DNA of 64,000 nucleotides from assembly GCA_950097015.1 (NCBI GenBank), contig CATNEN010000034.1, positions 3,844,001-3,908,000 of the forward strand, in the 5' to 3' direction. The notes under the pieces are model-generated. The model searched no databases and had not been told where the DNA came from. It saw only the letters and a program-made list of their open reading frames with translations. Below are positions 1 to 30,869 of this stretch, piece by piece (the first letter of the stretch is position 1; every line of letters starts with the position of its first letter). The stretch comes from Macrostomum hystrix. Lineage: Eukaryota; Animalia; Platyhelminthes. The position numbers were made by a program, and so were the translations under genes.

Positions 1-299
1 GAATGGAATGCACTGATCATGGAATGGAATGCACTGATCATGGAATGGAATGCACTGATCATGTAGTGGAATGCACTGTTCATGGAATGGAATGCAGTGA
101 TCATGGAGTGGAATGCACTGTTCATGGAATGGAATGCAGTGATCATGGAGTGGAATGCACTGTTCATGGAATGGAATGCACTGATCATGGAGTGGAATGC
201 ACTGTTCATGGAATGGAATGCACTGATCATGGAGTGGAATGCACTGTTCATGGAATGGAATTCATGGATCATGGAATGGAATGCACTGTTCATGGAATG
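1..299. repeat. 21-bp tandem repeat (ATGGAATGGAATGCACTGATC)n, truncated by window start
   Basis: About 14 near-identical units; the ORFs at 3..311 and 82..417 are its 7-aa translations. Confidence 0.97.
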
Positions 300-520
300 G
301 GTCTGGTTTAATGTAGATTTAACGCCGCTTAAGTCCAAAAAATCAAAAAACTCAACAAGCTCTTTGAAAGAGATCTATGGAAGTATCGTCTATGGCAAAA
401 AAGTAATACAAATCTAGAAAAATGCACATAATCGATTCTGGAAGAGCAATATTTCAGAAGACGAATATTTTAATGATCGAAAATTCTACAGATTTACGAG
501 TAATCTATTTGGTTCTACAG

Positions 521-3503
521 TGCTCATGGAGGACCTCGGGTCTTTTCAAGGAAACGATTCTGAAAAGTCCTCCAGCAGCAACTCGATGTCGCGATTGAGC
601 CAGATGTCAATTAGCAAGGATACGCACTGGCGTCGAGCTAGTGTCCGTTCCGCGATGTCATCGACTTCTCGGCCGGGCTCAATTTGCGACGGGTACAGTA
701 CGGGCAGCGAGTTCACTAATTGGACTACCGACCAACCAAGGCTTCGAGAATTCGGACTGGATTGCCTAGCACTGAGGAGTGTTAACTTCGGCTTCAAGCA
801 GCACACCTGGCTACAGTCTGTAGAGGAGGTTGGTGGCCTGGTTCGATTTCACAGTCAGCCGTTTGTCTGCGAGATTCTGCTGCAGCTTGACAAGTAAGAT
901 GGGTCAGGGGTGGATGGGTCAGGGGTAGATGGGTCAGGGGTGGATGTGTCAGGGGTGAATGGGTCAGGGGTGGATGGGTCACGGGTGGATAGGTCAGGGG
1001 TGGATGGGTCAGGGGTGGATGGGTCAGGGTGGATGGGTCAGGGGTGGATGTGTCAGGGGTGGATGGTTCAGGGGTGGATGGGTCAGGGGTGGATGGGTCA
1101 CGGGTGGATAGGTCAGGGGTGGATGGGTCAGGGGTGGATGTGTCAGGGGTGGATGGTTCAGGGGTGGATGGGTCAGGGGTGGATGAGTCAGGGGTGGATG
1201 GGTCAGGGGTGGATGGGTCAGGGGTGGATGGGTCAGGGGTGGATGAGTCAGGGGTGGATCGGTCAGGGGTGGATGGGTCAGGGGTGGATGGGTCAGGGGT
1301 GGATGGGTCAGGGGTGGATGAGTCAGGGGTGGATCGGTCAGGGGTGGATGGGTCAGAGATCGATTGCTCAGAAATTGTTGGGTTGTACTGATTTGGAGGG
1401 CTTATGGGGCTAATCCGGAATGCTCGAATTAAGCCAAAATCATATGCTGTAGGAGTTTAGCCACAGCTGATTGGACTCTGGGCCTAGTTCAGGGCTGCAG
1501 CCAATCCAGCTTCGTCGCCCAGTTCGAGGAGGCCTGCACCCTGGAGTCGTTCTCCCAGCCGCTGGCCGCTGGAACATTTCGCATGCTTAACGACAGCGAC
1601 GGCATCCAGTTCCCGTTTGCAACCCACACCAACTCGCTGCTTGAGGTGGACAAGAACACGGTGGTTGCTGACCAATGCCAGCTCCTGTCCTACAACTGCG
1701 TGTTCGCCCCGTACACTCAGGTGGACTTTTGAAGCTAGTTTGGCTTTAAGTACATATTTTGGTGCTAATATAGACGAGATTAGAGATTTAAGAATAATTT
1801 TGGACTATCGGCATACGTTTAGGAGAAATATGAAGACATTTTGTAGCAATGGGAAGAAATTTAGAAGAAATTAGGAGAAATTGGATGAAATTGGAAGAAA
1901 TGGGAAGAATTTAGGAAAAATGGGAAGAATTTAGGAGAAATGGGAAGAATTTAGGAGAAATGGGAAGAATTTAGGAGAAATGGGAAGAATTTAGGAGAAA
2001 TGGGAAGATTATAGAAGAAATGGGAAGATTATAGGAAAAATGGGAAGAATTTAGGAGAAATGGGAAGATTATACGAGAAATGGGAAGATTATAGGAGAAA
2101 TGGGAAGATTATATGAGAAATGGGAAGATTATAGGAGAAATGGGAAGATTATAGGAGAAATGGAAAGATTATAGGAGAAATGGGAAGAATTTAGGAGATA
2201 TGGGAAGAATTTAGGAGAAATGGGAAGAATTTAGTAGAAATGGGAAGAAATCAGGAGAAATGGGAAGAAATTAGGAGAAATGGGAATAATTTAGGAGATA
2301 TGGGAAGAATTTAGTAGAAATGGGAAGAAATTAGGAGAACTGGGAAGAGTAAAGGTAGAAATACATTTTTCGTAATGAAATGAAACGATAAAGGATTTTC
2401 ATTATTCGGAATAGTGCGAAGTCTATGGAAAGCAAATCGATCCTAGAAATTTGTTCAGATAAAAATGTTTTTTTAGACCGACGTTGCGCTGACGAGTCGC
2501 CAGCACTACCTGACCCACGTGAGCTTTCGGCAGAGCTGCACCACCTGGCTGGTTGCTGTGCGGCGCGGCGACCAAACGGAGCGTCACTATCACCAGCGCA
2601 TCAAGTACCTGACCTTCAATCCAACATGGGATCGCTTGTACTCACTCATGACTATGAGGTGGGATTGCGCTTTTGAGGTATGTCACTGGGAACGCTATTT
2701 TCATAGATGCCTCAAATTCCCTTCTCCGCTGTCTCCCATCAACCCATCTCAAATCCTTCTCTACGCTGTCTTCCATAATCCAAACTCAAATCCTCTTTCC
2801 GCTGTCTCCCATCATCCCAACTCAAATCCTTCTCTACGCTGTCTCCCATCATCCCAACTCAAATCCTTCTCTCCACTTTCTCCCATCATCCCAACTCAAA
2901 TCCTTCTCTCCACTTTCTCCCATCATCCCAACTCAAATCCTTCTCTCCACTTTTTCCCATCATCCCAACTCAAATCCTTCTCTCCACTTTCTCCCATCAT
3001 CCCAACTCAAATCCTTCTCTCCACTTTCTCCCATCATCCCAACTCAAATCCTTCTCTCCACTTTCTCCCATCATCCCAACTCAAATCGACCCCGAATCGA
3101 ACTGCATGGACTCCAGGCCGACTTAGACTATCGCCGTGGCGGAGAGACGGTCGTGAAATTCGACGAGAGCGGCTCCAACTTGCCGAGCATCTGCGAGCGA
3201 CCTCTGCCGGTGTTCCGCTCCGTGCTGCTTGGCCCCACACTGGCTGACACCCGTGCCACCATCTGCTACCCCGCCGATACCGGACAGCCGGCGCAGCTGC
3301 GGCAGCCGCCAAAGTACATCACGGTGCCCTGGGGCATTTGGCAGCGGCAAATGCAGCGAGAGAACTGCGGCTTGCTAGCCTACGGCAGCCAACAGAACTG
3401 GGAACCGCGCTTTTGGCCCATTCAACAGCCCAACAGTCTTATTGGGAATAATCCTGAGGTGGTGATTGATGTAGTTAAAACTACTGACAGCTCAAGCATG
3501 TAA
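521..3503 (+). CDS. FAM78: FAM78-family protein, last four exons (5' end probably upstream of the window)
   Basis: Phase-consistent GT-AG exons 521-893, 1453-1720, 2477-2677 and 3117-3503 (TAA). The spliced product contains WTLGLVQGCSQSSFVAQF, RMLNDSDGIQFPF, LTHVSFRQSCTTWLVAV and QPPKY. These match FAM78A/B motifs as I recall them (WVVGWIQACNQMEF, AISDSDGVSYPW, LTRIKRDQSFTTWLVAM, VIPPK). Confidence 0.8.
899..1355 (+). repeat. 15-bp G-rich tandem repeat (GGGTCAGGGGTGGAT)n in FAM78-like intron
   Basis: About 30 units, starting a few bp after the GTAAG donor at 894. Confidence 0.97.
1848..2350 (+). repeat. 20-bp purine-rich tandem repeat (AAATGGGAAGAATTTAGGAG)n in FAM78-like intron
   Basis: About 25 units, seen directly. 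Confidence 0.96.
2715..3086 (+). repeat. 37-bp pyrimidine-rich tandem repeat (TCTCCCATCATCCCAACTCAAATCCTTCTCTCCACTT)n in FAM78-like intron
   Basis: About 10 units filling most of intron 2678-3116. Confidence 0.95.
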
Positions 3504-3521
3504 CTCTGAGAATCTAGAAAC

Positions 3522-3885
3522 CAGATCGATAAATTCTTTCCTCTACTCCAACTGGATCGATAAATTCCTTCCTCTACTCCAACTGGATCGATAAATTCCT
3601 TCCTCTACTCCAACTGGATCGATAAATTCCTTCCTCTACTCCAACTGGATCGATAAAATCCTTCCTCTACTCCAACTAAATCGATAAATTCCTTCCTCTA
3701 CTCCAACTAAATCGATAAAATCCTTCCTCTACTCCAACTAAGTCGATAAATTCCTTCCTCTACTCCAACTGGATCGATAAATTCCTTCCTCTACTCCAAC
3801 TGGATCGATAAATTCCTTCCTCTACTCCAACTAAGTCGATAAATTCCTTCCTCTACCCAAACTAGATCGATAAATTCCTTCCTCT
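3522..3885 (+). repeat. 31-bp tandem repeat (ATCGATAAATTCCTTCCTCTACTCCAACTGG)n downstream of the FAM78-like stop
   Basis: About 12 units beginning ~20 bp after the TAA. Confidence 0.95.
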
Positions 3886-4453
3886 ACAAAAAATTCCTTC
3901 CTTACCTTTCCTTATAGCTTTTATTGATCACTTATACAAGTTACATGGTTACATAATAAATATTGTTCTTATGCATTGGTATATTATAGCTTATTTAATG
4001 ATTTTTTCATTTTTTAACTGTAATTCAAAATAAAAAGGGCATTTTCTTTGTTCTTCTTGAAGCATGTCTTGCTATGTTTTTGCTGTTTTTTTACTTATTA
4101 GAATTCTACTAAGAATATTGTGCTCAAATCACTGTAATATTAACTTCAATTTGATAGCACGTTTAGTGGTTAGCAAACCAATAGTAAAATGTATCTGATT
4201 TTAACGCATAGATGGGTCTTCTGAAAAACTGTTAAGAACAGCAGTAGTTGATTCTATTTTTAGACATATCTTGTGGAATCCCTCCTTTGCCACCAATACC
4301 CTAAGCACGTGACTTAAATGAGCCAATCAGATGAAACCTATGCATAGTCTTAGATTTTATATTACATAATTAATTCATGAAAATAGTTTAATCTTCATCA
4401 ACATCGACACCATCGCTGTATGTCAGCGATGTTAGAAGTCCCCTAAATTCCTG

Positions 4454-7400
4454 TCACTGGGCACTCTGCGCCCTGGCAACGTCAATCTTCCGCTTCAACT
4501 TGCTGCACTGCAGTGTGGCCTCCGAGTGCTGCATCTTCAACGACTCTAGCCGACTTCGCTTCTCAGTCACCAGGTCGGCGTTCTCCTCGAAGTTTCGCAG
4601 CAGGGCTTCGTTGCCAAGCAGGCCGCTGTTCTGCTTCAGCCGCTGATTGTCGTTGCGCAGAGCGTCTCGAGTCTGCTTGGTCCGAGTCAGCTGGTCCCGG
4701 CGCCTGGAAAGGGTCTGGTCCAGCTGGTCCAGCTGCTCGCACTGCTCCTGCTTCTTGCACTGCACGAACTGCAGCTTCTCCTTCAGGTGGGTCAGCACCT
4801 GGCAGAGGGACAGAGACAGGTGGTGGGCGTTTTACAGTAAATCCTTCTGTGGAGTCCTTCTGTGACTCTCTACCCAAATCCTTCTGTGACTCTCTACCCA
4901 AATCCTTCTGTGACTCTCTACCCAAATCCTTCTGTGATCCTCTACCCAAATCCTTCTGTAATCCTCTATCCAAATCCTCCTGTAATCCTTTACCCAAATC
5001 CTTCTGTAATCCTCTACCCAAATCCCTCTGTAATCCTCTACCCAAATCCCTCTGTAATCCTCTACCCCAATCCCTTTCTGTAATCCTCTACCCCAATCCC
5101 TTTCTGTAATCCTCTACCCCAATCCTTCTGTAATCCTTTACCCAAATCCCTCTGTAAGCATTTATTTTCCTTCTATGCGTCTCCCACCTGAACATTATTG
5201 TTAATCTTCTTCTTCAATTTGAGCAGCTCTTCCTGGCGCTCCTCAATTTTCTCATTGTAAGTCTGGTTCTCAATCTTCAGCTGCTCGAAGTCGATCATGT
5301 GCAGGCCCTCTGACAGCTCCTCCTTGGCTTTGAGCGATGTCTCGCACTTGCGCACTCGATTGCTCAGGCCGATGTTGTCTAGCCGGACTTTGGCCACCTG
5401 CGCGACGGAGCAGTCAAAATTGATAAATAAAGCTAAGCCAATATCCCTAGCGTGCTAATAACAGTGAGAATGCTAGCAAGATTTGTTAAGGACCACTAGG
5501 AAAGGACCAAGGCCATTTTTCTGAATCTAGCAACATTACTAGGGTCAACGTAAGCAGTAATAAATAAGTCATTGGGCTAGAGTCATTAAAAAAAGTTTTA
5601 GAATAATATCAAAACTTTAATCACTGATCAAAGAAAACAAAAAGCTATTTTCCGATCGATGTTTTAAAAACTAAAGCTTGAAAAAAATCGATTAAGCTAG
5701 GAATAAGGGAAATAATAGCAAAAGAAGAGCGTTAAATTAGCCTCAAAAAAGCACAGTCAGAAAAAAATGCTGATGAACTTTTTCTAAGAAACGGGGTTTT
5801 TTAGTTTCCCGTCCTTCTACTCCTAGTGGTACTTGACTCTTCGCATTGCTTGCTAAAATCCTCACGACCCCGTCACAATCTGGCAGAGGGCCTACCTTGT
5901 CCTCGAGTTCCGCCTCCTCCTGTAGCATGTCGTCCACGCTGGTGCTCAGCGGATCCTGCGACTTGCCGCCTCCGCCGACGCCACCGGCGGCCTCTGAACG
6001 CTTCTGCGTCACTGCTGGGAATGGCCGACCGTTTGTAACTGAAACAGCTTTGGATCCCACCTTCTTCTTGGCATCTAGCTGGCTCTGGAACAGCAGCCGC
6101 ACCTCCTCCTCGCGGCTCTGACACTCCAGCTCCAGTTCCTGAATTCTGTCGTCGAATTCCAGACGCTTGGCGTCGCGAGTCCGCCGCAGTTCGTCCAAGT
6201 TGAAGACGAATTTGGCGTATCGCTGCTCCTGATCCGTGATTGATTTCTCCGTCTCCTGGCTGGCCTCAGCCTGGCCACCCTGGTCGGCCTTCTTTCGTCG
6301 GAAATAATCGCTGAGTTTAGTCTGAAGCAGGCTGTTCTGGTGCAGCTTCTGCTCGCGCTCCTGCATGGCCTGTAAAAATGAGAAGATCGATTCAGGTGCA
6401 AACAGCGTGAGGCTATAAAAAGTATTCATAATTCTAGCAGGGTGGGGCAGTGAGCGCTGAGTAACCACTCAACCGAACACAGGCACACACTCACACAGGT
6501 TTGTCAATCTCATCGTCAGGTAGTGTGCTATAAAGTTACTTAGCGTAAATTGCACGAAAAGCCCCAAGTCTTCTCTCTGCGGAAGCGCAACAAATTAATG
6601 TTGCCTCGCCGTGGATTCGAGCTCAGGGAGCTTGGTGCGATTGTCGGATTCTCGCTTATTTCACTTAAAAGTTGTAAAAAAGGTAAAATAACTACCTGCT
6701 TATAGCTGGCGATCATGTGCTCACGATTAAACTCCTCTTCCTCGACTTCCTCCTCCTCATACTCTTCCTCTTCCTCCTCTTCGGCATCCTCGCCCTCTAC
6801 ACCGATCTCGTCGAAAGACGCGACGACTGCGTCTGGGGAAGTCGGTTCTGGGCGCTCGGCTTCTTCGTCAACTTCGTCAATACGATCTGCCCTCAGCCGC
6901 TCGTCAGCCGTTGGTGTCGGCTCTCGCGACAACTTCTCCGATGCTCTGGCTGGACTCTCAGTACGCTCGCCGTCGGCGAACGTTTCCGACATAGGCGGCT
7001 TTTCGCCATCGAGGCCTTCGCCAGCGCCTTCCTCAGCCACGCCTCCCTCCACTGTTGGCGCTTCACCGTCCGCCTCTTCGACAGCGTCTCCGGTGGCGGC
7101 AGCCTCTCCACCTTCGCCGCTTGCTGTTGCGCCACCCTCAGCTCCCTCTTCGCCTTCAACGGCGACCGGTGCTTCACCATCAGTGGCTTCCCCCTCCCCC
7201 TCAGCCTCGTCAGATTTCTGTTGATCAGCACCGTCGCCAGCGTCTCCTTCATCAGCAGCGGTCTCGCCATCAGCTTTTGTCTCTTCGTCTCCTGCAGCCG
7301 ATGCCTGACCTTCCTCTACTTCCTTCCCAGGAGCCTCATCGGCAGCTTCTGCATCATGAGTGGTCTCCACCAGCTGTTCGGAGGCAGTTTCAACTTCGCC

Positions 7401-9089: not shown

Positions 9090-9622
9090 GCATTTCATAG
9101 TGCTTTTTGTTTAGAATTCTGATAATAAATACATAGACCTACTGTGTTTAACATTAGCTTTGTTATGTTTGACTTTACTTTGACTTTGACATTTTATTTT
9201 AATATGGTCATATGGATAACAAAGCCTGGACTTGCTAGCTTGCTCATATGTATATAGGTCTTTTTAGAACTTACAATTATTTTTTGGCCCTGTAGCTAGA
9301 GCCTCCAGTGAGAAATTAAAAAAAATTCCATATTTTTGCTTTTCTTGTGTTACAGATATTGCTTGTCTGAGTTAAAAGACACCTCACTCATCAAAATTGG
9401 TCAAGTAATAAAAAGTTCTAACAATTTTTGATCAACATTTTAGTTGTTTTTGTAATGTATTTTTCCCTTAAGGGGCTGTGAATCTGTGATCCAGATGACC
9501 GTATAGATTTGACTTGGAAAACATAAAAAATGCAATAACAATTTTATTTTTTAATGGATTTTTTAATTCCAAAAGCATAGGCCTATAGTTCATTTTTTGT
9601 TATCTACACTATGGAATATATA

Positions 9623-10220
9623 TGTAATAGGTCTATTTTTCTGCATTATAGCTGGTGATGGTTTTCTTTTTATTTTCTCGCGCTACAAAATTTTATTACA
9701 TATTTTATATACATATAGTATATTACATATTATAAATATTTTATATACTTTATATAGTTTAGTAAATATGCGTTATTAAAACAAAGTTGATAAATGCTAT
9801 ATAAGCATGAAGTTTGTCGTGGTGATAATACAACTCGCCAGTGAGCCAAGAAAGGCAATATCTGAGTAAAAAGATCTTTTTGAATAAAGCAAAACGTGTT
9901 GTGTTAGTTATTGAGGAAACACATTTAGTGCAAAACCGAGGATTGAGGTTGTGACCCTCTGATCCTGGAGAAACGCCCAGCAGAGACTGGAGAAGAAGAG
10001 ACCAGTGCCTTAGAGGGATAAACCGCTCGTGCCAGTGCAGAAGCGCTACCTAGGAGAATCGCGCAACGTAAGAGTTGTGGTGTTAAAACGGCCCTTTTCA
10101 GGGCCACCGAGTTAAAGACATACGGAGAACGTAAACAGTAGAGAAGGAGATAAAAGAATAGAAGAGGCCAAAAGATACGCTACCATTAGAGAGAAAAGTA
10201 GAGAGACAAGCCCTGTTACA
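9623..10220 (+). repeat. 5' LTR of element 1
   Basis: TG...CA ends; TATATAA at 9798-9804; AATAAA at 9883-9888. Confidence 0.95.
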
Positions 10221-10224
10221 ACTT

Positions 10225-10243
10225 TGGTGGCAGCGGAAAGGAT
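10225..10243 (+). promoter_or_regulatory. Primer-binding site TGGTGGCAGCGGAAAGGAT (tRNA-Leu-like)
   Basis: TGG start 4 nt after the LTR end; TGGTGGCAGCGG is complementary to a tRNA-Leu-type 3' end (...CCGCTGCCACCA). Confidence 0.85.
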
Positions 10244-10305
10244 CAGAGAAACGGCCTCAATCAAGAATAGAGTAGATTATTAAGAAGAACGAAGAATTCA
10301 TAGAG

Positions 10306-10617
10306 ATGTCGATTATTATGCTGATAATAGCGGTGCTGATGAATCAGCAGCCAGGTATCCCTCCACTATTTGGAAGTGGTGGAACACAGTCAATGTTCGG
10401 TAATCCGACAATGTCTGGAAACCAGGAAGAAAAGAAAAAGCCTATGGGAAGAGGCATGATTTCGATGCAGAATAAGCAAGATATGGAGTACATCACAGAG
10501 AGGAATGTACAAAAGTTTAGCGGATGTTTCTTCTGTGCTAAGCCAGGACCTGTGAGGCCAGATGGACATCAATGTCGCATCACCTTAAACTTCCTGAAGC
10601 CGAACATGCCGAAGTAA
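10306..10617 (+). pseudogene. Short ORF, probable gag remnant with a broken zinc knuckle
   Basis: Lies directly after the PBS; CFFCAKPGPVRPDGHQC resembles CX2CX4HX4C but lacks the correctly placed His. Confidence 0.45.
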
Positions 10618-10759
10618 GATAGTAGAGAAGGCACGGTACACCAGAGAAGTGTACTGAAGGTGTAAATTCGTGTAAATATGTGCTGTCTATAGTCGTCACA
10701 GTTGTCACAAGTTGCTAAAAAGTTCTGAAAAAAGAAACACAAAAATAGTGAGTCAAGGA

Positions 10760-11070
10760 TTTAATAAATGGGCACACGGCCGTAGAAATTATGTGCTCCA
10801 ATACCTACTCAGTAGAAAAAGGAGTAGTGTGCAAAGAAAATGTAGAAGTTATAAAAAAGAATCTGCCGATAGAAGAAAAAGTGTTAAAATGTTATAAGTC
10901 GGGCATGTGAAATTAATTATTAAGAAATCTCTGAATGAATTGTTAGTAGTTGGCTTGCTCCAATGAAGTACAGCAATTCTGAAGGGGAAGAGCAATGTAA
11001 CGTCACAATTTAACGAAGAGTGTGAAGAAATGAGGAGTGATTTCTCTCTGAAAGAGTTATTAGTAGCTGA
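10760..11070 (+). pseudogene. Highly decayed RT / RNase H connection remnant
   Basis: Frame-broken fragments (ENVEVIKKNLPIEEKV; TAILKGKSNVTSQFNEECEE...SLKELL) weakly echo the gypsy pattern KVEAIK.P...PLT.LLKK...W.EEC..AF..LK..L. Many stops. Confidence 0.35.
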
Positions 11071-12212
11071 CATGTTTCAGTGAATTAAGGTAACTCAGAA
11101 GGGGAGGTGAAGTTTTCGGAGTGTTCCTGGATTGAAGTCCAGAAGCCCAGAGAGTAGTAGACTCTGGGAAAGTCATTGACAAGTTGTGAAGTCATGACTA
11201 AGTGATCAGTTCCAAAAGGCTGAGAAGAAGGCGCAGTGCTGATCTGAGGGATCAGATGTAGAGCCAGTGTTGTGGAATTTTGTAGAGGCACAAAGGTTGC
11301 CTGAAGTGGCCTACCTGAAGAAAGACACACTGTGGCCTGATGATCAGATGAGGACTGTGTTGTGATGTGAACAGGCATGATTGTGGCCTGAAGTATATTT
11401 AAGAGAGGCAAATGAGGCCTAGAGAAATGAGAGGAGACTCGTGTGAAATTTGAGAAGGCACGTGGCCTAAAGATAATCAAATAAGAAATTATGTAAGCAG
11501 AGTTAATAGATTAGAGAAGGCAGATGAGTCAACAGGAATAAATTAGGAAATTGGATATTGCCCGCATGCCAGTTAAATTTAAGTGACAGATGGTCGATAA
11601 GTAAATATTAATGAGCACCTTCCTAGTTGTGAGAATTGATTAAAAGGAGCGAGGTGATGAAGAAGAATATGTGACAACTGTGCGACATATAGTGTAAATA
11701 GTTGTATAAACACGCTTTAAACGTTGTGAAATTAGTATTAAATGTTGTCTCTGAATATTTCTGTTGTATAAACTGAAAGAAAATAAGTTATGCGTGCTAC
11801 TGTGAGTAAACGTGGGAGCACACTTAAGCTAAATATCCTCGCCATTAGAAAGGGTGAGAGTGATGACGTAACCACTTTCCCATAAGGATCAGTGCTAATT
11901 AGTTTCTAATTGCGGATTAAAAGCATCAAAAAGCGATTATCTCATGAAATAATGAAGCTAGAAAAGTGATTCAAAATCAGCAATAATCTACGGAAAGAGA
12001 TCTTTAAAAAGACACCAACCTTATTAAGAAAGGTTGAGAATTGCTCATAAAATCGTAAGCCACAAAATCAAGGCTAAAAGTCAAGTGTCAAAAGTAAGAG
12101 GTGGGGCGCGAAAGACCTTTGAATAGGTCCAGTTTTTGGCCCCGGTGAGTATAAATAACGGATTAGTTGGACCCCTGGAGAGACATGTTTTGAACAAATA
12201 ACGCCATCGAAA

Positions 12213-13178
12213 ATGAACAACGGCGAGGAAGAAAATCAGCATGAGCCGGACGAGATCGAGGCATTCCTAAAGGCGATTCAGGAAGACTACGATTTTCTTG
12301 AAGATGAGAATATGCCTGCCGAGGCTCCCGAGAGGCAGCCCACAAGACCGAGACTGCCTTCCGGCGGCAACAGAAGCAGCAGTAGCGGCGGTGGCAGCGG
12401 CAGTAGCGGCGGTGGCAGCAGCAGTAGCGGCGGCGGCAGCAGCAGCGGCGACAGAGGCAGCAGTGGCGGCGGCGGCAATAGAGGCGGCAGCGACGGCGGC
12501 GGCGGCAGTAGCAGCAGCAGCGGCGGCGACGGCAGCGGCAGCGGCAGTGGCAATGTCAGCGGAGGAAAAAGGGTGCGCCTAGACATGGAGGCGCGACCTG
12601 TGCCCGGTAACACAGCCACAGCCGCCAAAAGCCGCAAACAGCTGCTGTCCGAGCAAGCGGCTACGTTAGTAACGACAGCTGTGCGCGCCGACGGCTTGTC
12701 CTGCAGTCGGCAGTTATCGGCTCAGCCAGATCTGCGAAGGCAGCTAGCTAGTCGGCAATTCGTGTCAAGTGTGGAGCCGCCGACTCAGCAGCAGCCGCAG
12801 CCTCCGGCAGAAGCAGGTCCCACGGACTATCGGAACAACACTCGGGCGCTAATTCTTCAGCATGGTGTCCCCATTGAGCGGAGCAGACATGCCCTGGTGC
12901 AATACCTGCTGCGTATTGCCTTTTTGCGAACTGATGTGGCCTTGCCGCAGCGGGCCCAAGTGTGGCCAGCCATCAGAGTCCTACGCGAACGGATGTCGAG
13001 GACCAACTCCATGACAATTGTACGAGATGTCTGCGCCACCGTCAGGAGGGCCATTGCTGCGGATGGCCGGACCCCATTCCGGCAGCTTCTGGCCATCGAG
13101 GTTCGGTGGGTGAGCCAGCAGCTCGGCTGGCCTTTCTACCGGGAACTGCCGGAGCCGTGTGATTTTGACCAGGCCTAA
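12213..13178 (+). CDS. Uncharacterised 321-aa accessory protein of LTR element 1
   Basis: Intact GC-rich ORF in an otherwise decayed element. TATAAAT at 12150-12156; AAAATGA start context. Acidic N-terminus, Gly/Ser linker, KRVRL basic motif and an R/L/A-rich, probably helical C-terminal region of ~110 aa. Confidence 0.7.
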   Translation: MNNGEEENQHEPDEIEAFLKAIQEDYDFLEDENMPAEAPERQPTRPRLPSGGNRSSSSGGGSGSSGGGSSSSGGGSSSGDRGSSGGGGNRGGSDGGGGSSSSSGGDGSGSGSGNVSGGKRVRLDMEARPVPGNTATAAKSRKQLLSEQAATLVTTAVRADGLSCSRQLSAQPDLRRQLASRQFVSSVEPPTQQQPQPPAEAGPTDYRNNTRALILQHGVPIERSRHALVQYLLRIAFLRTDVALPQRAQVWPAIRVLRERMSRTNSMTIVRDVCATVRRAIAADGRTPFRQLLAIEVRWVSQQLGWPFYRELPEPCDFDQA

Positions 13179-13343
13179 TTGTCTAATTATGGACTATAAA
13201 TTTAGTACCTATTACATTTTATAATTTTTTTTTTTGCGTTGGTGTCGTATTTTTAGGTGTCGTGTCTTGTATTAATGTTGTAATTTTTCTTTTTGTATTT
13301 CTGTAAAAAAAAATTCTCACTCATGTTTTTATTCCAATTTTTT

Positions 13344-13359
13344 AAAAAGAGAAGGCAGG
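13344..13359 (+). promoter_or_regulatory. Polypurine tract AAAAAGAGAAGGCAGG of element 1
   Basis: Purine run immediately 5' of the 3' LTR. Confidence 0.85.
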
Positions 13360-13360
13360 T

Positions 13361-13958
13361 TGTAATAGGTCTATTTTTCTGCATTATAGCTGGTGATGGT
13401 TTTCTTTTTATTTTCTCGCGCTACAAAATTTTATTACATATTTTATATACATATAGTATATTACATATTATAAATATTTTATATACTTTATATAGTTTAG
13501 TAAATATGCGTTATTAAAACAAAGTTGATAAATGCTATATAAGCATGAAGTTTGTCGTGGTGATAATACAACTCGCCAGTGAGCCAAGAAAGGCAATATC
13601 TGAGTAAAAAGATCTTTTTGAATAAAGCAAAACGTGTTGTGTTAGTTATTGAGGAAACACATTTAGTGCAAAACCGAGGATTGAGGTTGTGACCCTCTGA
13701 TCCTGGAGAAACGCCCAGCAGAGACTGGAGAAGAAGAGACCAGTGCCTTAGAGGGATAAACCGCTCGTGCCAGTGCAGAAGCGCTACCTAGGAGAATCGC
13801 GCAACGTAAGAGTTGTGGTGTTAAAACGGCCCTTTTCAGGGCCACCGAGTTAAAGACATACGGAGAACGTAAACAGTAGAGAAGGAGATAAAAGAATAGA
13901 AGAGGCCAAAAGATACGCTACCATTAGAGAGAAAAGTAGAGAGACAAGCCCTGTTACA
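13361..13958 (+). repeat. 3' LTR of element 1
   Basis: Same 598-bp sequence as 9623-10220; the ORF track gives identical antisense peptides for both copies. Confidence 0.95.
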
Positions 13959-15528
13959 TATATATATTCTATTAACACTCAGTATTAAAGTATTAAATTT
14001 CGATTTTACATTAAATAGGATTACTATGCTGACAAGACATGTTTATTTGTTTGCAATATAAAACTATTTTGGCTTTAAAGATGTGGCAAAGCCATACCTA
14101 TTCCATAGCTTAACAAATAGATGTCGCATAGACATCAATTTACTATTTACAGTCAATGCAAAAGCCATCTGAAATGTGTAAAGGGGTACATTAGAGAAAC
14201 ATGTTTCTGAGAGATTCCACTAAAGGAAAATAAAAAGGTTTGACTATATCATATTCTACATAAAATTCTACATTAAATTTTAATGGGATACACTTGTAAA
14301 ACACTATAAACAATGTTCAAAAACAAAATATAAAACTTTCAAACAGAAAATTTATGAAGAAAAAATGTTTTAAGCAAATAATTACTTTTTATTTATAGAA
14401 TTTTATTTTCTCTTTCTGAATATTTACTTTGTTTGACTCAGTACCAATGCATAACTTAAAAATTTCAAAATCTATGTATGTTTGTTTTTTTGACTTTTTG
14501 ATCACACAACAATTTTTTTAAATAACAAACTTTGACACAGTATAACTTTCTTGTTATTGCACCTATTGTAGAGTAGAAAAACTCGTTAGAAAGTAAATTT
14601 TTATATTCTTTCTACTGATGATAAGCTTTCTTCTCTAACCAAAATATTTTAATTCTTTTTTTTCTTCAGAAAATTGCATTTTCTTCATTTTTCATTTTTT
14701 ATTCACTTACTGGTGTCCTTACTGTAGCTATCGTCAGTCATCAAACAAATATTAATAGTTATAATTTTCATGTGTCTCTGAAATTTGGATGAAGCAAAAT
14801 AATATTCTCAGACATGCTTCAAAAAACTCAGGAAGTTAGATTTTTATCTGTAGGAGTAAACTCCAAAGACAGTGCAGTCTCTTTCTTTATAAGAATTACT
14901 AGCTAGCTAGAGTTTTGACAATATGAAGTTGTTTAGTAAGGCCTTGAGTCATAATATCCATAGCTAATATATGGCACTTATTTGTTTCATATTATATGTA
15001 CTATTTTGGTTCATTTGGCATTTTGGTTCATATAATTCTATTTCAGTTCCAATTCACACCTTGTCCTTAACCATAGTTTTTTATCTTAAATTTCTCTGTT
15101 TAAATTGTCCTTTCAAACATCATCCTCTATAAAATAGGCTTTAGGGGTTTGCTAAAATCAATTTTACATGATGTATCAAATATTTACATATTGTTTATAT
15201 GACAAAACAAAGCAAAGTTTTTGTCATGAACTTACACTTAAAAATGAACGAACAATAATACATTAGTGCCCCAATTACCCATACCCTTAGTTAGGCCAAA
15301 GTGGCAGTTTAGAAAATTTTGGTAAATATTAGTGCACACAGACAGTAAAATCCAAAGTTTGCTACTATACTCATAATATAAACTGTGTAGATCAGTATTA
15401 GCAGTTGTGTCATCATTGTAGTTATAAATTTGAATTTTCTGAATAAACAGTTCAATTTTAACTTGTTAATTCACACCCAGATTTTGTCACCAGAGGTTGC
15501 ATCAGATAGCACTATACACAGCAACATA

Positions 15529-18500
15529 ATGACTGACGGTAAAGAATCACGTGCTGGCAAGGGCTTGTCATTTGGTCCGCAGTGGATACAGAAGCTGCAG
15601 AGCGGCCAGACTGACGGCATGACACCGCCGCCGACTCCGACTTCGCCAGCTGTTGGAGCATTGAAATCTGGCGCCGGATCGTTTGGTATTGGTGGCGGCG
15701 GCAGCGGCGCTGGTCAGCATCGATACACGCGAGATGAAATCCTTAAGCTATCCGAGTGGGCCATGAAATCGGCAAAACCGCCCTGTTTGGCTAGATTTCC
15801 CGAGATTTGCTCAAACGAACCGCAGCCGGCATTAGCTAATTTGCCGCCAACGGAGAAAGAACAATACCTGATGAGCAAAGGCTTTAACAGTGCGGCTGTG
15901 TTGAAGAATTACAATAGGTCAGTTTTTAGTTTAATCTTGCTATTTTCTCTATGGTCAATGGTTCATAAACCTTTTTTTGTTATTCAGAGACAAAGACCGG
16001 GACTGGGGAGGCGAAGGCGGCGGTCGCGAGCTGGACATTCGGGACCGGGATCCCAGCGACAGGCCGGTCCGGGAGCGTCTGGTTGTCGGCTCCGATTCTG
16101 CGCGAAGTCGCGGCGGGGGCCTCGGATCTAGTTCGCAGGAGCGCGGTGGTCATCGGGGTCGGGGTCGAGGCCGCGGCCAGCCGGTTGCCGGCGGACGCGA
16201 ACCCGGCGGTGTCGGCGTCGCAGCGGTCGGCGGCGGTTCGAGTTTCCACGAGCCTCGGCGGCTGATTGGAAACGCGGACGCCGACGACGATTGGCGTTCG
16301 CGCTCGTCTAGACCGGCGCCGGCTGCCGTGGCTACAACAGCGGCCTCTGGCGAAGCGGTAGCTTCCACGGCGCCACCAACGCGTGCTTGGAGACCCCGTG
16401 GCGGAGCGACTGCGGCTGCCACCGTCGGGGAGACTACTCGCGGCGGTGGCAGCGGCGGCGGTCCCGGTCGATGGCGCCTGGGCACCACCGGTGGGTCAAC
16501 CGGTGCTACGACGACTGGCAGCGGGCCACGTCGTCGGCCAGGTTAGATTTCAATTATTTTTGCCGGTACTGATTGGAAGATTCTATCCTGGCACTGTTTC
16601 TTGCTTTCAGGAGGCGATCCTGGGGACACCAGTGGCGGCGAGGCACTGCCGGAGTGGAGCCAGGATACTGACGAGTTCGGAGGTCGCTCCTTGGGAGGCG
16701 GCACCGGCAGTGTAGCGGCCGGCAGCGGTGGCACTTTCGACAGCGGCGGCAAGTACATCGCCGTTGTTTCCGATTCTAGACAGAAGTCCAAGCATGTAGA
16801 AGACGAAGAAGCGGATTACAACGACGAGGAGGAAGAGCACGAAGAGGAAGATCTTCCGCAATTGGTCGACAACGTTGAATCAGCTGACGGGGGCGGCGGT
16901 GCCTCTGAATTAGGGCAATTAAAATCGCCGCCAAGAGGTGAACGCAGTTGGTTCTATCAGGACCGGGTCGGTCAAGTCCAGGGCCCGTTCAATTCGCACC
17001 AGATGCTTGAGTGGAACAAAGGCGGCTATTTTCAACCGGAGCTCATGGTTAAACGATCGGAAGATGCCAGATTTGCTCAATTGGCTGATTTCTTCCGGCT
17101 TTACTCGGGCAATCCGTTTGTCCGGCCGGGCAATCGACCGGAGTCGCCGCCACCGTTGGAGCCTGAGCTGGCACCACCAGCAACATCTATAGTGACTACT
17201 TCTACTGCAATAACGTCTACAGTTGTGCCAGAAGCAGCGGCCCTGATGCCCCAGATGCTGCAGATGATGCGCAGCACATTAGAAGCCGAATTAGAGCAGC
17301 GGGCCAGGGCGTTGCGTGAGCAGGAGGAAAAACTGCGACTTGAGCAGTTAGAGATTGAGCGAGCTAGGCGCGAGCTAGAGGAGAAGCTGGCCCGAGACCT
17401 CGAAGAGCAGACTAGACAGCGGCAGGCGGCAGAGGAGCGGCTTCGTCTATTTGAAGCCGAGAAGCTACGCATTCAACGCGAGGAGGAAATGCGGCGCGAG
17501 CAGCAGAGATTAGAGCAGGCCGAGGAATTGACCAGGCAGAAGCGGCAGGCCGAGGACCTCGCCAGGCAGCAGCTGGCGGAGGAGCTGTCTAGACAGCAGC
17601 GCCAGACAGAAGAGCTGGCCAGGCAGCGCCAGGCTGAAGTGCTGGACAGGCAGCAGCAGCAGGCAGAAGAGACCGCTGCTCTACAGAGGAAACAGGCAGC
17701 TGCGGAAGAAGAAGCGGCCGCAAAAATGCGGCGTCAAGCTTCTGAAGTGTCGTCTGCTTCATTAACCCGGCCAGCCAAACAGGTTGTAGACGCAGACGAA
17801 GCTGATAGACAGATGCAGCTAATTAGGCAACTAGCTGAAGTGAAATGGAAGCGACCGGAACAGAAACCTCAGTCGCCGCCACCTCTGCAACAGCAGCAAC
17901 CGCAGACGCCAGCCACGCTGCAGTCACCGCAGCAGGACTTCGGACAGGGATTTCGAATGCCTTCAACTGCGCGCTGGGCCTCTAGCCCATCCCAAGTGGC
18001 TTCGTTGGCATCGGCAGCTGTTGGCAGTCCAACCCAGACGCAATCGCTATTAGAAATTCAGCGCGCCCAGGAGCGGGCTCTGCAACTAGAGCAGCAGAAA
18101 CAGCGCCAGTTAGAACAGCTGGAGCGGGAGCAGGCTGCCGCTGCGGCTCGGGCTCAAGCCGCTGCCGGAGCGCCCTGGGGCTCAGCCCGCACGGGTCCAA
18201 CCAAATCTTTGGCGGAGATTCAAGCTGAAGAGGAGGCTAAGCGTACAACCTCGGCTCAGCAGCAGCATCAGTATCAGCAACCGCAGCACCATTTTGTTAG
18301 GGCTAGTGGCGCCGGTGGCTACACGGCCGTACCAGCCACCGCTCTGTGGTCCGGTAAAGTGCGCGAAAATGCTCCACCCCAGCCGCCCCCTCAGCAGCAG
18401 CCGCCGCCGCCCGCTACGTCGCAACCAACGGCGGCTAGTTTGGCTTCGATATGGAATTTTGAGTCGCTGTCTATTGGTGCGAAATCGCCAAATACAACTA

Positions 18501-19906
18501 CAACGACGTCTACGCCGGCTGTATCGACAACTGCCGGTCCGGCTCTTGTTCCTAAGCCAAAGGCTAATCAGGCTAAACAGCAACAGCCTGTAAAGACTTC
18601 ATCATCAGCCACAGCCAGCACGGATGCGGTTAGTCGAAAGGCCCGCGAGGAGGACAAAGCTCAGCAGGTGCTTCGTCAGAATCTAGCTAGACAAGGCAGC
18701 TCTGCTAGCGACTCGCTAACTTTATGGTGCCAGCAACAATTGCGCGGCCTAGACACGCAGGTTGACATTCCGACTTTAATTGAACTGCTAAAAGACATTG
18801 AAGATCCAAACGATGTGGACGATCTAATTAAGAGCTATCTTGGCGAGAATGCGCGAACTGTGGAGTTTAGTAAGAACTTCTTAAAGAAGCGCATCGAATT
18901 CAAGTATCAGGAGAGGAACGGCGGCGACCAGGTGAGTCAGATCACCCGCTTAAGTCAATGCTATATTTTTATAGTTTGCTTCTGTGCTAAACGGCGTTAA
19001 CACAACACTTTTTCAACTCACTTATACATATTTACCTTGACATCCGTATCTAGTCTCTCAACTCATCAGACAGAAACGAGTTTATGTCGCATACTGGAAG
19101 ACTTTAAGATATTATAATTTATCCGTTAAATCTTCCCTGGATTTCCCATGACTGGAAGTTCCATCGCGGCTTGCAAAATCTATTTTTTAGAAGTTACTTT
19201 TTTTATTGTCATCCCTTCGCTTCGGGGCCACCCTCGGGGATTCTATTTTTATAAGCATCCCTTATCAATTTCATCACTTCGCTTCGGGGTCACCCTCGGG
19301 GATTCTATTTTTAGAAGCATCCCTTATCAATTTCATCACTTCGCTTTGGGGTCACCCTCGGGGATTCTATTTTTAGAAGCATCCCTTATTAATTTCATCC
19401 CTTCGCTTCGGGGCCACCCTCGGGGATTCTATTTTTAGAAGCATCCCTTATCAATTTCATCACTTCGCTTCGGGGCCACCCTCGGGGATTCTATTTTTAG
19501 AAGCATCCCTTATCAATTTCATCACTTCGCTTTGGGGTCTCCCTCGGGGGATTTATTTTTAGAAGCACGATTTACCATCGTTATCTCTTCGATGTTGGGC
19601 AACCCTTTAGAGTAAATTATTTTTGCATCAAACTAAAATGCTAACCCAAAACGCTTTGTTTAGCATTTATCCGCTTCGGGCGCCTCGGTCGCTGGCAGCT
19701 CCTCTTTAGCCGGCGCAGCGGGATCGCCTGCCGCCAAGTCTGGCAAAGACGCTTCGGAGAAGTCCAACAATTTCCAGCCGGTTGCTGGCAGCAAGAAGAA
19801 GAAGAAGAACACGAAGAAGTTTAAAGTGCACTCGGATATGCTGGGCTTCACTAGCGCCCCGAGTTCGACCCGGTCCAACATTGGCCAGATTGAGACCGCC
19901 GATTAA
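15529..19906 (+). CDS. GIGYF2: GRB10-interacting GYF protein (GIGYF1/2 family), about 1170 aa, 4 coding exons
   Basis: Phase-consistent exons 15529-15917, 15988-16541, 16611-18931 and 19664-19906. Motifs: N-terminal LSFGPQW and RYTRDEIL; LPEW...GTFDSGG; GYF domain WFYQDRVGQVQGPFNSHQMLEWNKGGYF; C-terminal WCQQQL...VDIPTLIELLKDIEDP...YLGE...FSKNFLKKR; terminal KKKKK...MLGF...NIGQIETAD. Confidence 0.93.
19190..19565. repeat. 62-bp tandem repeat (...AGAAGCATCCCTTATCAATTTCATCACTTCGCTTCGGGGTCACCCTCGGGGATTCTATTTTT...) in GIGYF last intron
   Basis: About 6 units; period measured 19301 to 19363. Confidence 0.93.
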
Positions 19907-21874: not shown

Positions 21875-22120
21875 TCAGAGTGGACAGATCTGACACTAAA
21901 TTGTCAGCTCAGAGTGGACAAGTCTGACACTACAAACTGTCAGCAGACGGGTCAGCTCAGAGTGGACAGATCTGACACTAAACTGTCAGCAGACGGGTCA
22001 GCTCAGAGTGGACAGATCTGAAACTAAACTGTCAGCAGATGGGTCAGCTCAGAGTGGAAAGATCTGACACTAAACTGTCAGCAGACGGGTCAGCTCAGAG
22101 TGGGCAGATCTGACACTAAA
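21875..22120. repeat. About 46-bp tandem repeat (GTCAGCTCAGAGTGGACAGATCTGACACTAAACTGTCAGCAGACGG)n
   Basis: About 5 units with an internal CTGAC...GTCAG inverted repeat. Confidence 0.9.
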
Positions 22121-28100: not shown

Positions 28101-28119
28101 TGAATGCCATCAAATGCCT

Positions 28120-30300
28120 CCACTGAAATCAATAGACACCTTCCTAATGAGATCTATCGACACCTTCCTAATTAGATCTATCGACACCTTCCTAATTAGA
28201 TCTATCGACGCCTTTCTAATTATATCTATCGACAACTTCCTAATATGATCTATCGACACCTTCCTAATTAGATCTATCGACACCTTCCTAATTAGATCTA
28301 TCGACACCTTCCTAATTAGATCTATCGACACCTTCCTAATATAATCTATCGACGCCTTCCTAATTAGATCTATCGACACCTTCCTAATTAGATCTATCGA
28401 CACCTTCCTAATATAATCTATCGACGCCTTCCTAATTAGATCTATCGACATCTTCCTAATTAGATCTATCGACACTTTCCTAATATTATCTATCGACACC
28501 TTCCTAATATAATCTATCGACGCCTTCCTAATATGATCTATCGACACCTTCCTAATATAATCTATCGACGCCTTCCTAATTAGATCTATCGACGCCTTCC
28601 TAATTAGATCTATCGACGCCTTCCTAATTAGAGCTATCGACGCCTTCCTAATTAGATCTATCGACGCCTTCCTAATTAGATCTATCGACGCCTTCCTAAT
28701 TAGATCTATCGACGCCTTTCTAATTAAATCTATCGACACCTTCCTAATATGATCTATCGACACCTTCCTAATATATTGACGCCTTCCTAATTAGATCTAT
28801 CGACACCTTCCTAATATAATCTATCGACACCTTCCTAATTAGATCTATCGACGCCTTCCTAATTAGATCTATCGACACCTTCCTAATTAGATCTATCGAC
28901 ACCTTCCAAATTAGATCTATCGACACCTTCCTAATTAGATCTATCGACACCTTCCTAATATAATCTATCGACACCTTCCTAATATAATCTATCGACACCT
29001 TCCTAATATAATCTATCGACACCTTCCTAATTAGATCTATCGACACCTTCCTAATATAATCTATCGACACCTTCCTAATATGATCTATCGACACCTTCCT
29101 AATTAGATCTATCGACACCTTCCTAATATGATCTATCGACACCTTCCTAATATAATCTATCGACACCTTCCAAATATGATCTATCGACACCTTCCTAATA
29201 TAATCTATCGACACCTTCCTAATATAATCTATCGACACCTTCCTAATATAATCTATCGACACCTTCCTAATTAGATCTATCGACACCTTCCTAATATAAT
29301 CTATCGACACCTTCCTAATATGATCTATCGACACCTTCCTAATTAGATCTATCGACACCTTTCTAATATGATCTATCGACACCTTCCTAATATAATCTAT
29401 CGACACCTTCCAAATATGATCTATCGACACCTTCCTAATATAATCTATCGACACTTTCTTAATATAATCTATCGACACCTTCCTAATTAGATCTATCGAC
29501 ACCTTTCTAATATGATCTATCGACACCTTCCTAATATAATCTATCGACACCTTCCAAATATGATCTATCGACACCTTCCTAATATAATCTATCGACACTT
29601 TCTTAATATAATCTATCGACACCTTCCTAATTAGATCTATCGACACCTTCCTAATGAGATCTATCGAAACCTTCCTAATATGATCTATCGACACCTTCCT
29701 AATATGATCTATCGACACCTTCCTAATTAGATCTATCGACACCTTCCTAATATGATCTATCGACACTTTCCTAATATAATCTATCGACACCTTCCTAATA
29801 TGATCTATCGACACCTTCCTAATATAATCTATCGAGACCTTCCTAATTAGATCTATCGACACCTTCCTAATATAGTCTATCGACACCTTCCTAATATGAT
29901 CTATCGACACCTTCCTAATATGATCTATCGACACCTTCCTAATTAGATCTATCGACACCTTCCTAATGAGATCTATCGACACCTTCCTAATATGATCTAT
30001 CGACACCTTCCTAATTAGATCTATCGACACCTTTCTAATATGATCTATCGACACCTTCCTAATATAATCTATCGACACCTTCCTAATATGATCTATCGAC
30101 ACCTTCCTAATATAATCTATCGAGACCTTCCTAATTAGATCTATCGACACCTTCCTAATATAGTCTATCGACACCTTCCTAATATGATCTATCGACACCT
30201 TCCTAATATGATCTATCGACACCTTCCTAATTAGATCTATCGACACCTTCCTGATTAGATCTATCGACACCTTCCTAATATGATCTATCGACACCTTCCT
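28120..30300. repeat. 24-bp satellite (CTATCGACACCTTCCTAATTAGAT)n, about 90 units, with higher-order structure
   Basis: Direct observation; the 560-aa and 217-aa minus-strand ORFs are its translations. Confidence 0.98.
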
Positions 30301-30869
30301 ACTGAGAACTATCAACATCGTCCTCCTAATTGACGGAGCTAATGTAAAAAAAGTTCTGAGAACCTTTGAACTTGACAGCTGAATTCTCTCTGTCGCGATC
30401 TGTCTTCTTTGTCTCTCTGACTGACTTGTTGACAGACCACAAGTCCGCAAGCTTCATCCTGGATTCGCAAGGCTTTAGTGTTTACATTTTTTTCTAATGC
30501 ACTTCTTTCGCTTTGGACTCCTGGCGGCCCGTGACTCGCGTAGAGGTTTGTGTGGTTCGTATGAAAAATAATAACAAAATCCCATGTTTACTAGCTGATT
30601 TAGCATCTCCTGGGATCAGATTGTCTTAATCCCGGACATCAACATATTTCGTCACAACCCTTATCGGCAGTGTGACAAGATTGCTCCCAGAGATTTATCT
30701 CATGTTCCCATCGAGACAGCGCCCGCAGAGCTCTCAGAGCATTTTGAACCTGAATTAGCATACTTGGTCGAGGTTAGTTATTTTAGATATATAAACATAT
30801 CGATGTGCTCAGGATGTGCTCATTAATGTAATTAAACCTACAGTCAATAATGTGCTCGATCGTGTGCTC

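What the first reader, a model, noticed from the sequence alone, without database searches (positions are those of the whole stretch)
12100..13360. Intact unknown 321-aa cargo ORF with its own promoter inside a gag/pol-dead LTR element
Seen: the retroviral genes of element 1 have decayed almost beyond recognition, yet this GC-rich ORF in the env position is uninterrupted. It has TATAAAT ~60 bp upstream and could end at the 3' LTR AATAAA. The protein has an acidic hydrophobic N-terminus (DEIEAFLKAIQEDYDFLED), a Gly/Ser linker, an NLS-like KRVRL and a compact C-terminal region I do not recognise. It has no signal peptide or TM segment, so it is not env. Inference: it is kept by selection and may be a nuclear accessory factor (transactivator or anti-silencing protein) of a parasitic retroelement family.
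Basis: partly seen in the sequence, partly recalled or inferred. Interest (0 to 1): 0.8.

Follow-up and report, generated by a model that had tools for sequence, protein, structure and literature searches.

The report
Orphan gene riding a flatworm retroelement
A young LTR retroelement with no gag or pol, in a Macrostomum-like flatworm genome, carries one intact gene of a small flatworm-only protein family of unknown function; it is most likely a host gene picked up in passing, which is a known kind of event.

Summary
The ORF is real: 12213-13178, + strand, 321 aa. It lies inside a well-formed LTR element (9623-13958, 4,336 bp) with identical 598-bp LTRs, TG..CA ends, a TATA target duplication, and PBS-like and purine-tract signals.

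The rest of the interior shows no gag/pol at all. Pfam finds nothing, and stop density equals that of shuffled sequence. Because the LTRs are identical, the element was already non-autonomous when it inserted. "The ORF survived while gag/pol decayed here" is therefore not a valid argument for selection in this copy.

The genome is a flatworm close to, but not the same as, Macrostomum lignano. An exhaustive protein search found a tiny family of about seven proteins, all Macrostomum or unnamed. They share the ORF's N-terminal acidic module and C-terminal domain at 45-50% identity, while the linker is only 13-20% identical. So the family is under purifying selection.

The C-terminal domain folds confidently as a five-helix bundle with no PDB, viral or Pfam relative. 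It is not env, capsid or a known transactivator.

Best reading: a host mRNA captured by a non-autonomous LTR element (0.5). Rival: a true element-borne accessory gene (0.3). I left out the look-up of the relatives' loci that would decide between them.

The parts
9619..9622 (.). Left copy of the target-site duplication (TATA; could be read as 6 bp)
   Evidence: The same four bases directly flank both ends of the element. The site lies in a TA-repeat context, so this is weak on its own.
9623..10220 (+). 5' LTR, 598 bp, with TG..CA ends, TATA-like sites at 9731 and 9798, and AATAAA at 9883
   Evidence: 100% identical to 13361-13958. Signals. No canonical heat-shock element was found.
10225..10242 (+). 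Primer-binding-site-like stretch that starts with TGG, 4 nt after the 5' LTR
   Evidence: Read. Its reverse complement ends in CCA, as a tRNA 3' end does. The matching tRNA was not identified.
10221..12069 (+). AT-rich, purine-skewed interior with no detectable coding content (treated as one part)
   Evidence: Pfam found nothing in 10 open pieces from both strands. The interior scanned (10221-12212) has 51, 53 and 55 stops in the three + frames, against 50.7 +/- 6.8 in shuffles. The longest + strand ATG-started ORF (103 aa) has no PDB relative.
12070..12212 (+). Leader of the GC-rich island upstream of the ATG; holds TATAAAT (12150-12156) overlapping a GGTGAGT
   Evidence: GC content rises from about 12070. 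Sequence. Chance expectation for the TATA-like site is 7.4%.
12213..13178 (+). Intact 321-aa ORF, a member of a small Macrostomum-restricted protein family
12213..12356 (+). Conserved N-terminal module (residues 1-48): an acidic helix followed by a Pro/Arg motif
   Evidence: 21/46 identical to P0002 and 17/38 to P0007. Helix at residues 12-32 in the low-confidence single-sequence model. No PDB relative.
12362..12551 (+). Degenerate 3-nt and 21-nt repeats that encode the Gly/Ser run; an in-frame expansion specific to this lineage
   Evidence: Tandem Repeats Finder. The run aligns to gaps in every relative.
12567..12581 (+). Basic patch (residues 119-123), possibly a nuclear localisation signal
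   Evidence: Basic residues align at the same place in P0001, P0002 and P0007. Coordinates. Function is inferred only.
12825..13166 (+). Conserved C-terminal domain (residues 205-318): a five-helix bundle followed by a conserved tail
   Evidence: 46-50% identical to P0001, P0002 and P0003, and 36% to P0004; 15 invariant columns. AlphaFold2 with the family alignment gives pLDDT 86.9 and pTM 0.81. No fold relative.
13179..13343 (+). AT-rich 3' tail (about 25% GC) with a T11 run (13225-13235) and an A9 run (13305-13313)
   Evidence: The A-run could be a poly(A) remnant of a captured mRNA, but no canonical poly(A) signal precedes it.
13344..13359 (+). Polypurine tract one base before the 3' LTR
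13361..13958 (+). 3' LTR, with AATAAA at 13621 where ORF-containing transcripts could end
13959..13962 (.). Right copy of the target-site duplication (TATA)

Best explanation
Shown:
- Window 9623-13958 is a recently inserted, structurally complete but non-autonomous LTR retroelement in the genome of a flatworm related to Macrostomum lignano.
- Its only coding content is a full-length, intact member of a small Macrostomum-restricted protein family.
- That family has a conserved acidic N-terminal module, a fast-evolving disordered linker with a basic patch, and a conserved C-terminal five-helix domain of no known fold.

Inferred:
- The gene entered the element as a host mRNA. While the RNA of an already gag/pol-less element was being copied with enzymes supplied in trans by an autonomous partner, reverse transcriptase switched templates onto a co-packaged host mRNA and back. 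This is LTR-mediated retroposition.
- The chimera then integrated like any other copy, about 1.5 kb upstream of a GYF-domain gene.
- The ORF is intact here mainly because the copy is young. The family as a whole is kept by purifying selection.
- The protein's architecture suggests a soluble, possibly nuclear, protein-binding adaptor.
- Transcripts would start at the 5' LTR or an internal site and end at the AATAAA of the 3' LTR.
For: - Element anatomy: identical LTRs, TG..CA ends, target duplication, PBS-like and purine-tract signals.
- No gag/pol: no Pfam hit in any open piece, and stop density equals shuffled sequence.
- Youth: 0 differences in 598 bp between the LTRs, so divergence is below 0.5% at 95% confidence.
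- Host-like coding island: GC rises about 140 nt before the ATG and falls at the stop codon. GC3 is 0.60-0.67, against 0.56 in the neighbouring GYF exon and 25-39% overall GC in the rest of the element.
- The ORF covers the whole family architecture from the first to the last conserved motif.
- Its relatives are annotated as ordinary low-copy hypothetical genes on 100-390 kb M. lignano scaffolds. Each exact protein is seen on only 1-4 contigs, in clusters of 1-2 members, which is unlike a multicopy element protein.
- Only six hits came from 1.84 billion representatives.
- An A9 run lies 127 nt after the stop and 47 nt before the 3' LTR.
- The mechanism, and chimeras of this layout, are documented in flies, mosquito, fish, birds, mammals, maize, rice and yeast (PMC5131818).
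Against: - No parental gene has been identified. The closest relatives are only 45-50% identical and come from another species.
- In documented cases the retrocopy replaces part of recognisable gag/pol, and none remains here.
- No canonical poly(A) signal precedes the A-run.
- No spliced-leader remnant was found, although only about 30% of M. lignano genes are trans-spliced and the species differs.
- Junction microsimilarity could not be examined.
- The genomic context of the relatives was not examined, because that step was left out.
- The position just before the 3' LTR is also where elements keep their own extra genes.
Confidence: 0.5

Rival explanations
1. The family is an accessory gene of an LTR-element lineage. 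It is carried at the 3' end of the element and kept by selection acting on the element. This copy would be a stripped-down derivative that kept the accessory gene, lost gag/pol and is copied in trans.
For: - The ORF sits directly before the purine tract and 3' LTR, where extra retroelement genes normally lie.
- It is the only stretch of the element that is both open and conserved.
- The family is confined to one genus whose genomes hold many Ty3/Mdg4 families (PMC12801592).
- Repeat masking could explain why so few members are annotated.
Against: - No family member carries a pol, gag or env domain.
- The one merged model that holds a fragment of the domain (P0005) sits next to weak, sub-threshold LINE-type motifs and LRRs, not LTR-element pol.
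- Relatives are low-copy.
- The ORF's composition is unlike the rest of the element.
- From general knowledge, I know of no precedent for a non-autonomous LTR element that keeps only a gene unrelated to gag.
Confidence: 0.3
2. The ORF is a host gene in its original place that merely came to lie between two independently inserted solo LTRs, or between two elements of one family.
For: The relatives look like ordinary host genes.
Against: - The PBS-like site abuts the inner edge of the left LTR and the purine tract abuts the inner edge of the right LTR.
- The two LTRs are identical.
- The same four bases flank the outer ends.

Together these point to one insertion of one element.
Confidence: 0.04
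3. The open frame is a by-product of GC-rich repeats and encodes no protein.
For: The Gly/Ser stretch is a triplet-type repeat that is open in several frames.
Against: - The non-repetitive 197 residues stay open in only 0.2% of shuffles.
- They match four independent protein clusters at E from 2e-30 to 2e-11.
- They fold with pLDDT 86.9.
Confidence: 0.01

Closest known systems
LTR-mediated retrocopies (Tan et al. 2016, PMC5131818), for example the chimeric retrocopies flanked by LTR-element sequence in Drosophila melanogaster
   Same: An intronless-looking gene sits between the two LTRs of one element. The chimera keeps both LTRs and integrates with a target duplication. It behaves as a non-autonomous element and can be co-transcribed with the LTRs.
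   Different: No parental gene or junction microsimilarity has been shown here. The flanking interior has no gag/pol remnant. The whole coding sequence is present, whereas the usual retrocopy is partial. The host is a flatworm.
Maize Bs1 and the rice LTR elements that carry host gene fragments (as summarised in PMC5131818)
   Same: A low-copy LTR element whose interior is host-derived coding sequence and which is copied in trans.
   Different: Bs1 joins fragments of three genes, whereas this element holds one complete ORF. One is in plants and the other in a flatworm.
Large non-autonomous LTR elements (LARD-type), from general knowledge
   Same: LTRs, PBS and purine tract are present, the interior is non-coding, and gag/pol must come from a partner.
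   Different: LARDs are defined by having no ORF, and this element carries an intact, conserved one. Its interior (3.1 kb) is at the small end for that class.
Extra 3' genes of retroelements and retroviruses (env or ORF3 of insect Ty3/Mdg4 elements; regulatory proteins of complex retroviruses), from general knowledge
   Same: Position between the pol region and the 3' LTR. The acidic-plus-basic modular build loosely recalls regulatory proteins.
   Different: The ORF has no signal peptide, membrane segment or env domain. No sequence or fold match to any viral protein was found. I had Tat-, Tax- and Rex-like regulators in mind, and none came back as a hit.

Membership tests
LTR retroelement (structural definition) | Two long terminal direct repeats with TG..CA ends | tested here: met
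   598 bp, 100% identical, with TGTAA...TTACA ends.
LTR retroelement (structural definition) | Target-site duplication | tested here: met
   TATA lies on both flanks and could be read as 6 bp. The support is weak because the site is a TA repeat.
LTR retroelement (structural definition) | Primer binding site after the 5' LTR and polypurine tract before the 3' LTR | tested here: met
   A stretch starting with TGG lies 4 nt after the LTR, and a 16-nt purine tract lies 1 nt before the 3' LTR. The cognate tRNA was not identified, and the window holds no tRNA gene.
Autonomous LTR retrotransposon or endogenous retrovirus | Recognisable gag and pol (protease, RT, RNase H, integrase), intact or broken | tested here: not met
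   No Pfam hit at E <= 1 in any of 10 open pieces, and stop density equals shuffles. There is therefore no identifiable gene in which breaks could be counted.
LTR-mediated retrocopy (PMC5131818) | Host-derived, intron-free gene sequence between the LTRs of one element | tested here: inconclusive
   There is a host-like GC island, and relatives are annotated as low-copy host genes. Host origin has not been demonstrated.
LTR-mediated retrocopy (PMC5131818) | A parental gene elsewhere in the same genome, and microsimilarity at both junctions | not tested
   This needs the source genome and the relatives' loci.
Retroelement env / ORF3 | Signal peptide, membrane anchor, and an env or fusion-protein domain | tested here: not met
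   The N-terminus is acidic and the maximum 19-residue hydropathy is 1.08. No Pfam hit and no viral fold match.
Gag capsid / Arc-like helical domain | Fold similarity to retroviral or Ty3 capsid lobes | tested here: not met
   The confident model (pLDDT 86.9) gave a best Foldseek E of 0.73 against the PDB and 0.68 against viral models, with no capsid among credible hits.
Retroviral regulatory proteins (Tat-, Tax-, Rex-like) | Sequence or fold similarity to a named member | tested here: not met
   No named hit in Pfam, PDB sequences, PDB folds or viral folds. Whether it works like one cannot be tested with these tools.
Macrostomum orphan family (P0001-P0004, P0007, P0008) | C-terminal domain with 15 invariant positions, plus the conserved tail and N-terminal module | tested here: met
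   E values from 2e-30 to 2e-11. Alignment A1. Identities.

The most novel reading that the evidence does not exclude
The family is a previously unrecognised class of retroelement accessory protein. It would have an acidic module, a basic patch and a new five-helix domain, and would be kept by selection in LTR-element lineages across Macrostomum species, even in derivatives that have shed gag and pol entirely. That would imply it gives the element, or its host, something that trans-supplied proteins cannot.
Probability: 0.25. Interest if true: 0.7.

Novelty: new member of a known kind. Interest (0 to 1): 0.35.

Why it matters
- If the capture reading holds, this is a clean example in flatworms of LTR elements moving whole host genes. 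It shows that a non-autonomous element family was active very recently in this genome, next to a conserved GYF-domain gene.
- It brings to light an uncharacterised, genus-restricted protein family with a confidently predicted helical domain that has no known structural relative. Such families are candidates for lineage-specific biology.
- It is a caution for annotation. The ORF is absent from a collection of 15 billion predicted proteins, probably because it lies in a repeat.
- If the rival holds, it would be a new kind of retroelement accessory gene.

Tried and rejected
- **Insect origin.** I first took the window for insect (Drosophila-like) DNA. I rejected this when every named relative of the ORF and of the GYF gene proved to be Macrostomum lignano.
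- **M. lignano itself.** Rejected because the GYF exon is only 63% identical to its best M. lignano match.
- **Word-index searches.** The search with residues 125-321 found nothing, not even the ORF itself. The profile search added nothing new.
- **Family and sequence libraries.** Pfam, NCBIfam and PDB sequence searches of the ORF, its modules and the family found nothing.
- **Single-sequence AlphaFold2.** The model was too poor to use (pLDDT 43).
- **P0005.** UniRef calls it 'RNase H domain-containing', but it is a merged gene model. It has sub-threshold LINE-type motifs, a truncated copy of the domain and an LRR gene, so it gives no link to LTR-element pol.
- **P0006.** This is a repeat-protein artefact.
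- **Spliced-leader remnant.** The two halves of the 35-nt leader printed in PMC8629364 do not occur in the window at up to 3 mismatches.
- **Other negatives.** There is no second copy of the element or of the ORF in the window, no canonical heat-shock element in the LTR, and no Rfam or tRNA hit.

Full report
**Observation.**
- It is 62% GC inside DNA that is 25-39% GC.
- Its codon-position GC pattern resembles the neighbouring host exon.
- The other five frames hold 5-14 stops each.
- The non-repetitive residues 125-321 stay open in only 43 of 20,000 shuffles.
- The acidic N-terminus (net -12), the Gly/Ser run (59 of 79 residues), the basic patch at residues 119-123 and the absence of any membrane-like stretch are all as described.

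**The element.** A self-comparison shows one pair of 598-bp direct repeats, 100% identical, at 9623-10220 and 13361-13958.
- The repeats begin with TG and end with CA.
- The same four bases (TATA) flank both outer ends.
- A stretch starting with TGG, whose complement ends in CCA, lies 4 nt inside the left repeat.
- A 16-nt purine tract lies 1 nt inside the right repeat.
- Each LTR holds TATA-like sites and one AATAAA.

This is a single, complete LTR element of 4,336 bp. It is the only LTR pair in the window, and there is no second copy of the element or the ORF.

**No gag or pol, and what that means.** The interior before the ORF is about 2 kb.
- Ten open pieces from both strands, each searched on its own, gave no Pfam hit at E <= 1.
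- The longest + strand ATG-started ORF (103 aa) has no credible PDB relative.
- The three + frames hold 51, 53 and 55 stops, against 50.7 +/- 6.8 in shuffled sequence.

So no identifiable retroviral gene exists here whose breaks could be counted. The interior is simply non-coding.

With 0 differences in 598 bp, LTR divergence is below 0.5% at 95% confidence. Only a handful of substitutions can have hit the interior since insertion. The element was therefore already non-autonomous when it integrated and must have been copied with proteins from another element.

**Whose genome.** A GYF-domain gene starts about 1.5 kb downstream. Its best matches are Macrostomum lignano proteins at 63% identity. 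All named relatives of the ORF are also M. lignano. The window therefore comes from a flatworm related to M. lignano but not from M. lignano itself. Other Macrostomum genomes have been assembled (PMC10468722).

**The protein family.** The word-index search found nothing. The exhaustive search of 1.84 billion representatives with residues 125-321 found six proteins. Four are true relatives:
- P0001: 235 aa, E 2e-30, from an unnamed Logan assembly.
- P0002: 349 aa.
- P0003: 90 aa.
- P0004: 118 aa.

P0002, P0003 and P0004 are 'hypothetical proteins' of M. lignano, on scaffolds of about 196-392 kb. Each exact sequence is seen on 1-4 contigs.

The alignment shows 15 invariant positions in the C-terminal domain and a conserved tail. 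In the full-length members it also shows a shared acidic N-terminal helix, a Pro/Arg motif and a basic patch at the same place. Identity to the ORF varies by region:

| Region | Identity to the ORF |
|---|---|
| N-terminal module | 45-46% |
| C-terminal domain | 46-50% (36% to P0004) |
| Linker | 13-20% |

Two conserved modules around a free-running linker, kept open across species whose GYF protein has diverged to 63%, means purifying selection on the family. The Gly/Ser run is a degenerate triplet and 21-nt repeat found only in this member.

**Fold.** With the family alignment, residues 200-321 fold as a five-helix bundle (pLDDT 86.9, pTM 0.81). Foldseek found nothing credible in the PDB (best E 0.73) or among viral models (best E 0.68). 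Profile and sequence searches of the PDB, Pfam and NCBIfam were also empty. The domain is therefore not env, not a capsid lobe and not a known regulator.

**Origin.** Two readings remain.

*Capture of a host mRNA by template switching during reverse transcription.* This mechanism is well documented (PMC5131818). It fits several observations:
- the sharp host-like GC island, which rises about 140 nt before the ATG and falls at the stop codon;
- the complete coding sequence;
- the A9 run 127 nt after the stop;
- the low copy number and ordinary annotation of the relatives.

Against it:
- no parent gene is known;
- there is no flanking gag/pol remnant, unlike the published cases;
- no poly(A) signal precedes the A-run;
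- no spliced-leader remnant was found.

*An element-borne accessory gene.* This fits the position before the 3' LTR. However, no family member is joined to LTR-type pol. The one merged model, P0005, holds only sub-threshold LINE-type motifs, a truncated copy of the domain and an LRR gene.

I put capture at 0.5 and an element gene at 0.3.

**Expression claims.** TATAAAT at 12150 is real, but 7.4% of random 150-nt stretches of this window hold such a site, and it overlaps a donor-like GGTGAGT. Ending at the AATAAA in the 3' LTR (13621) is plausible. No transcript data were available.

**How it most likely works.** Every step here is inferred except the anatomy.
- The element is transcribed from its 5' LTR.
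- It is packaged and reverse-transcribed by a Ty3/Mdg4-type partner; such families abound in M. lignano (PMC12801592).
- It is then integrated, taking the ORF along as a passenger.
- The protein looks like a soluble, possibly nuclear, adaptor. An acidic helix and a basic helical domain (net +7) would bind partners, joined by a disordered linker.

- I did not look up the genomic loci of the relatives, or further copies of the element. This is the main reason the origin stays open.
They were covered by Pfam, by a PDB search of residues 1-48 and by the family alignment.
I met no contig that I took for human.
- The two 20-nt search patterns are overlapping halves of the 35-nt host spliced leader printed in PMC8629364. 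I halved it to tolerate 5' truncation within the three-mismatch limit, not to pass any check.
- It is not identified as any gene.

Noticed in passing
window 27980-31000 and 32117-32840: A large 24-bp minisatellite of about 110 copies, 85-93% alike in the core, with a related array (78-80% identical) about 2 kb further on. It is open on the minus strand (a 560-aa frame), with only spurious Pfam hits.
   Followed up: partly
window 15430-19000 (+): A GYF-domain gene (Pfam GYF, E 2e-16) with at least two coding stretches. Its best relatives are M. lignano proteins at 63% identity. The LTR element sits about 1.5 kb upstream of its first coding stretch and might influence it.
   Followed up: partly
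window 1-300, 1818-2362, 2711-3087, 3519-3887, 4855-5160, 19179-19567, 21875-22120: Many short tandem arrays with periods of roughly 20-62 bp are scattered through the window, so the region is unusually rich in minisatellites.
   Followed up: no
window 41188-42339 (-): A 383-aa open frame with many weak coiled-coil-type Pfam hits; probably an exon of a coiled-coil protein.
   Followed up: no
window 43346-45709 (+): Two adjacent long open frames (397 and 387 aa) in a region of about 60% GC have no Pfam hit. They may be exons of another lineage-specific gene.
   Followed up: no
window 10221-12212: The element's interior is strongly purine-skewed on the + strand. As a result the minus strand has far fewer stops (23-34 per frame) and shows a 131-aa open frame. 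This is an effect of composition, with no Pfam hit.
   Followed up: yes
protein P0005 (M. lignano, 1495 aa): A public gene model merges weak LINE-type motifs, a truncated copy of this family's domain and an LRR gene. It is probably an annotation chimera around a family pseudogene or a stray exon.
   Followed up: partly
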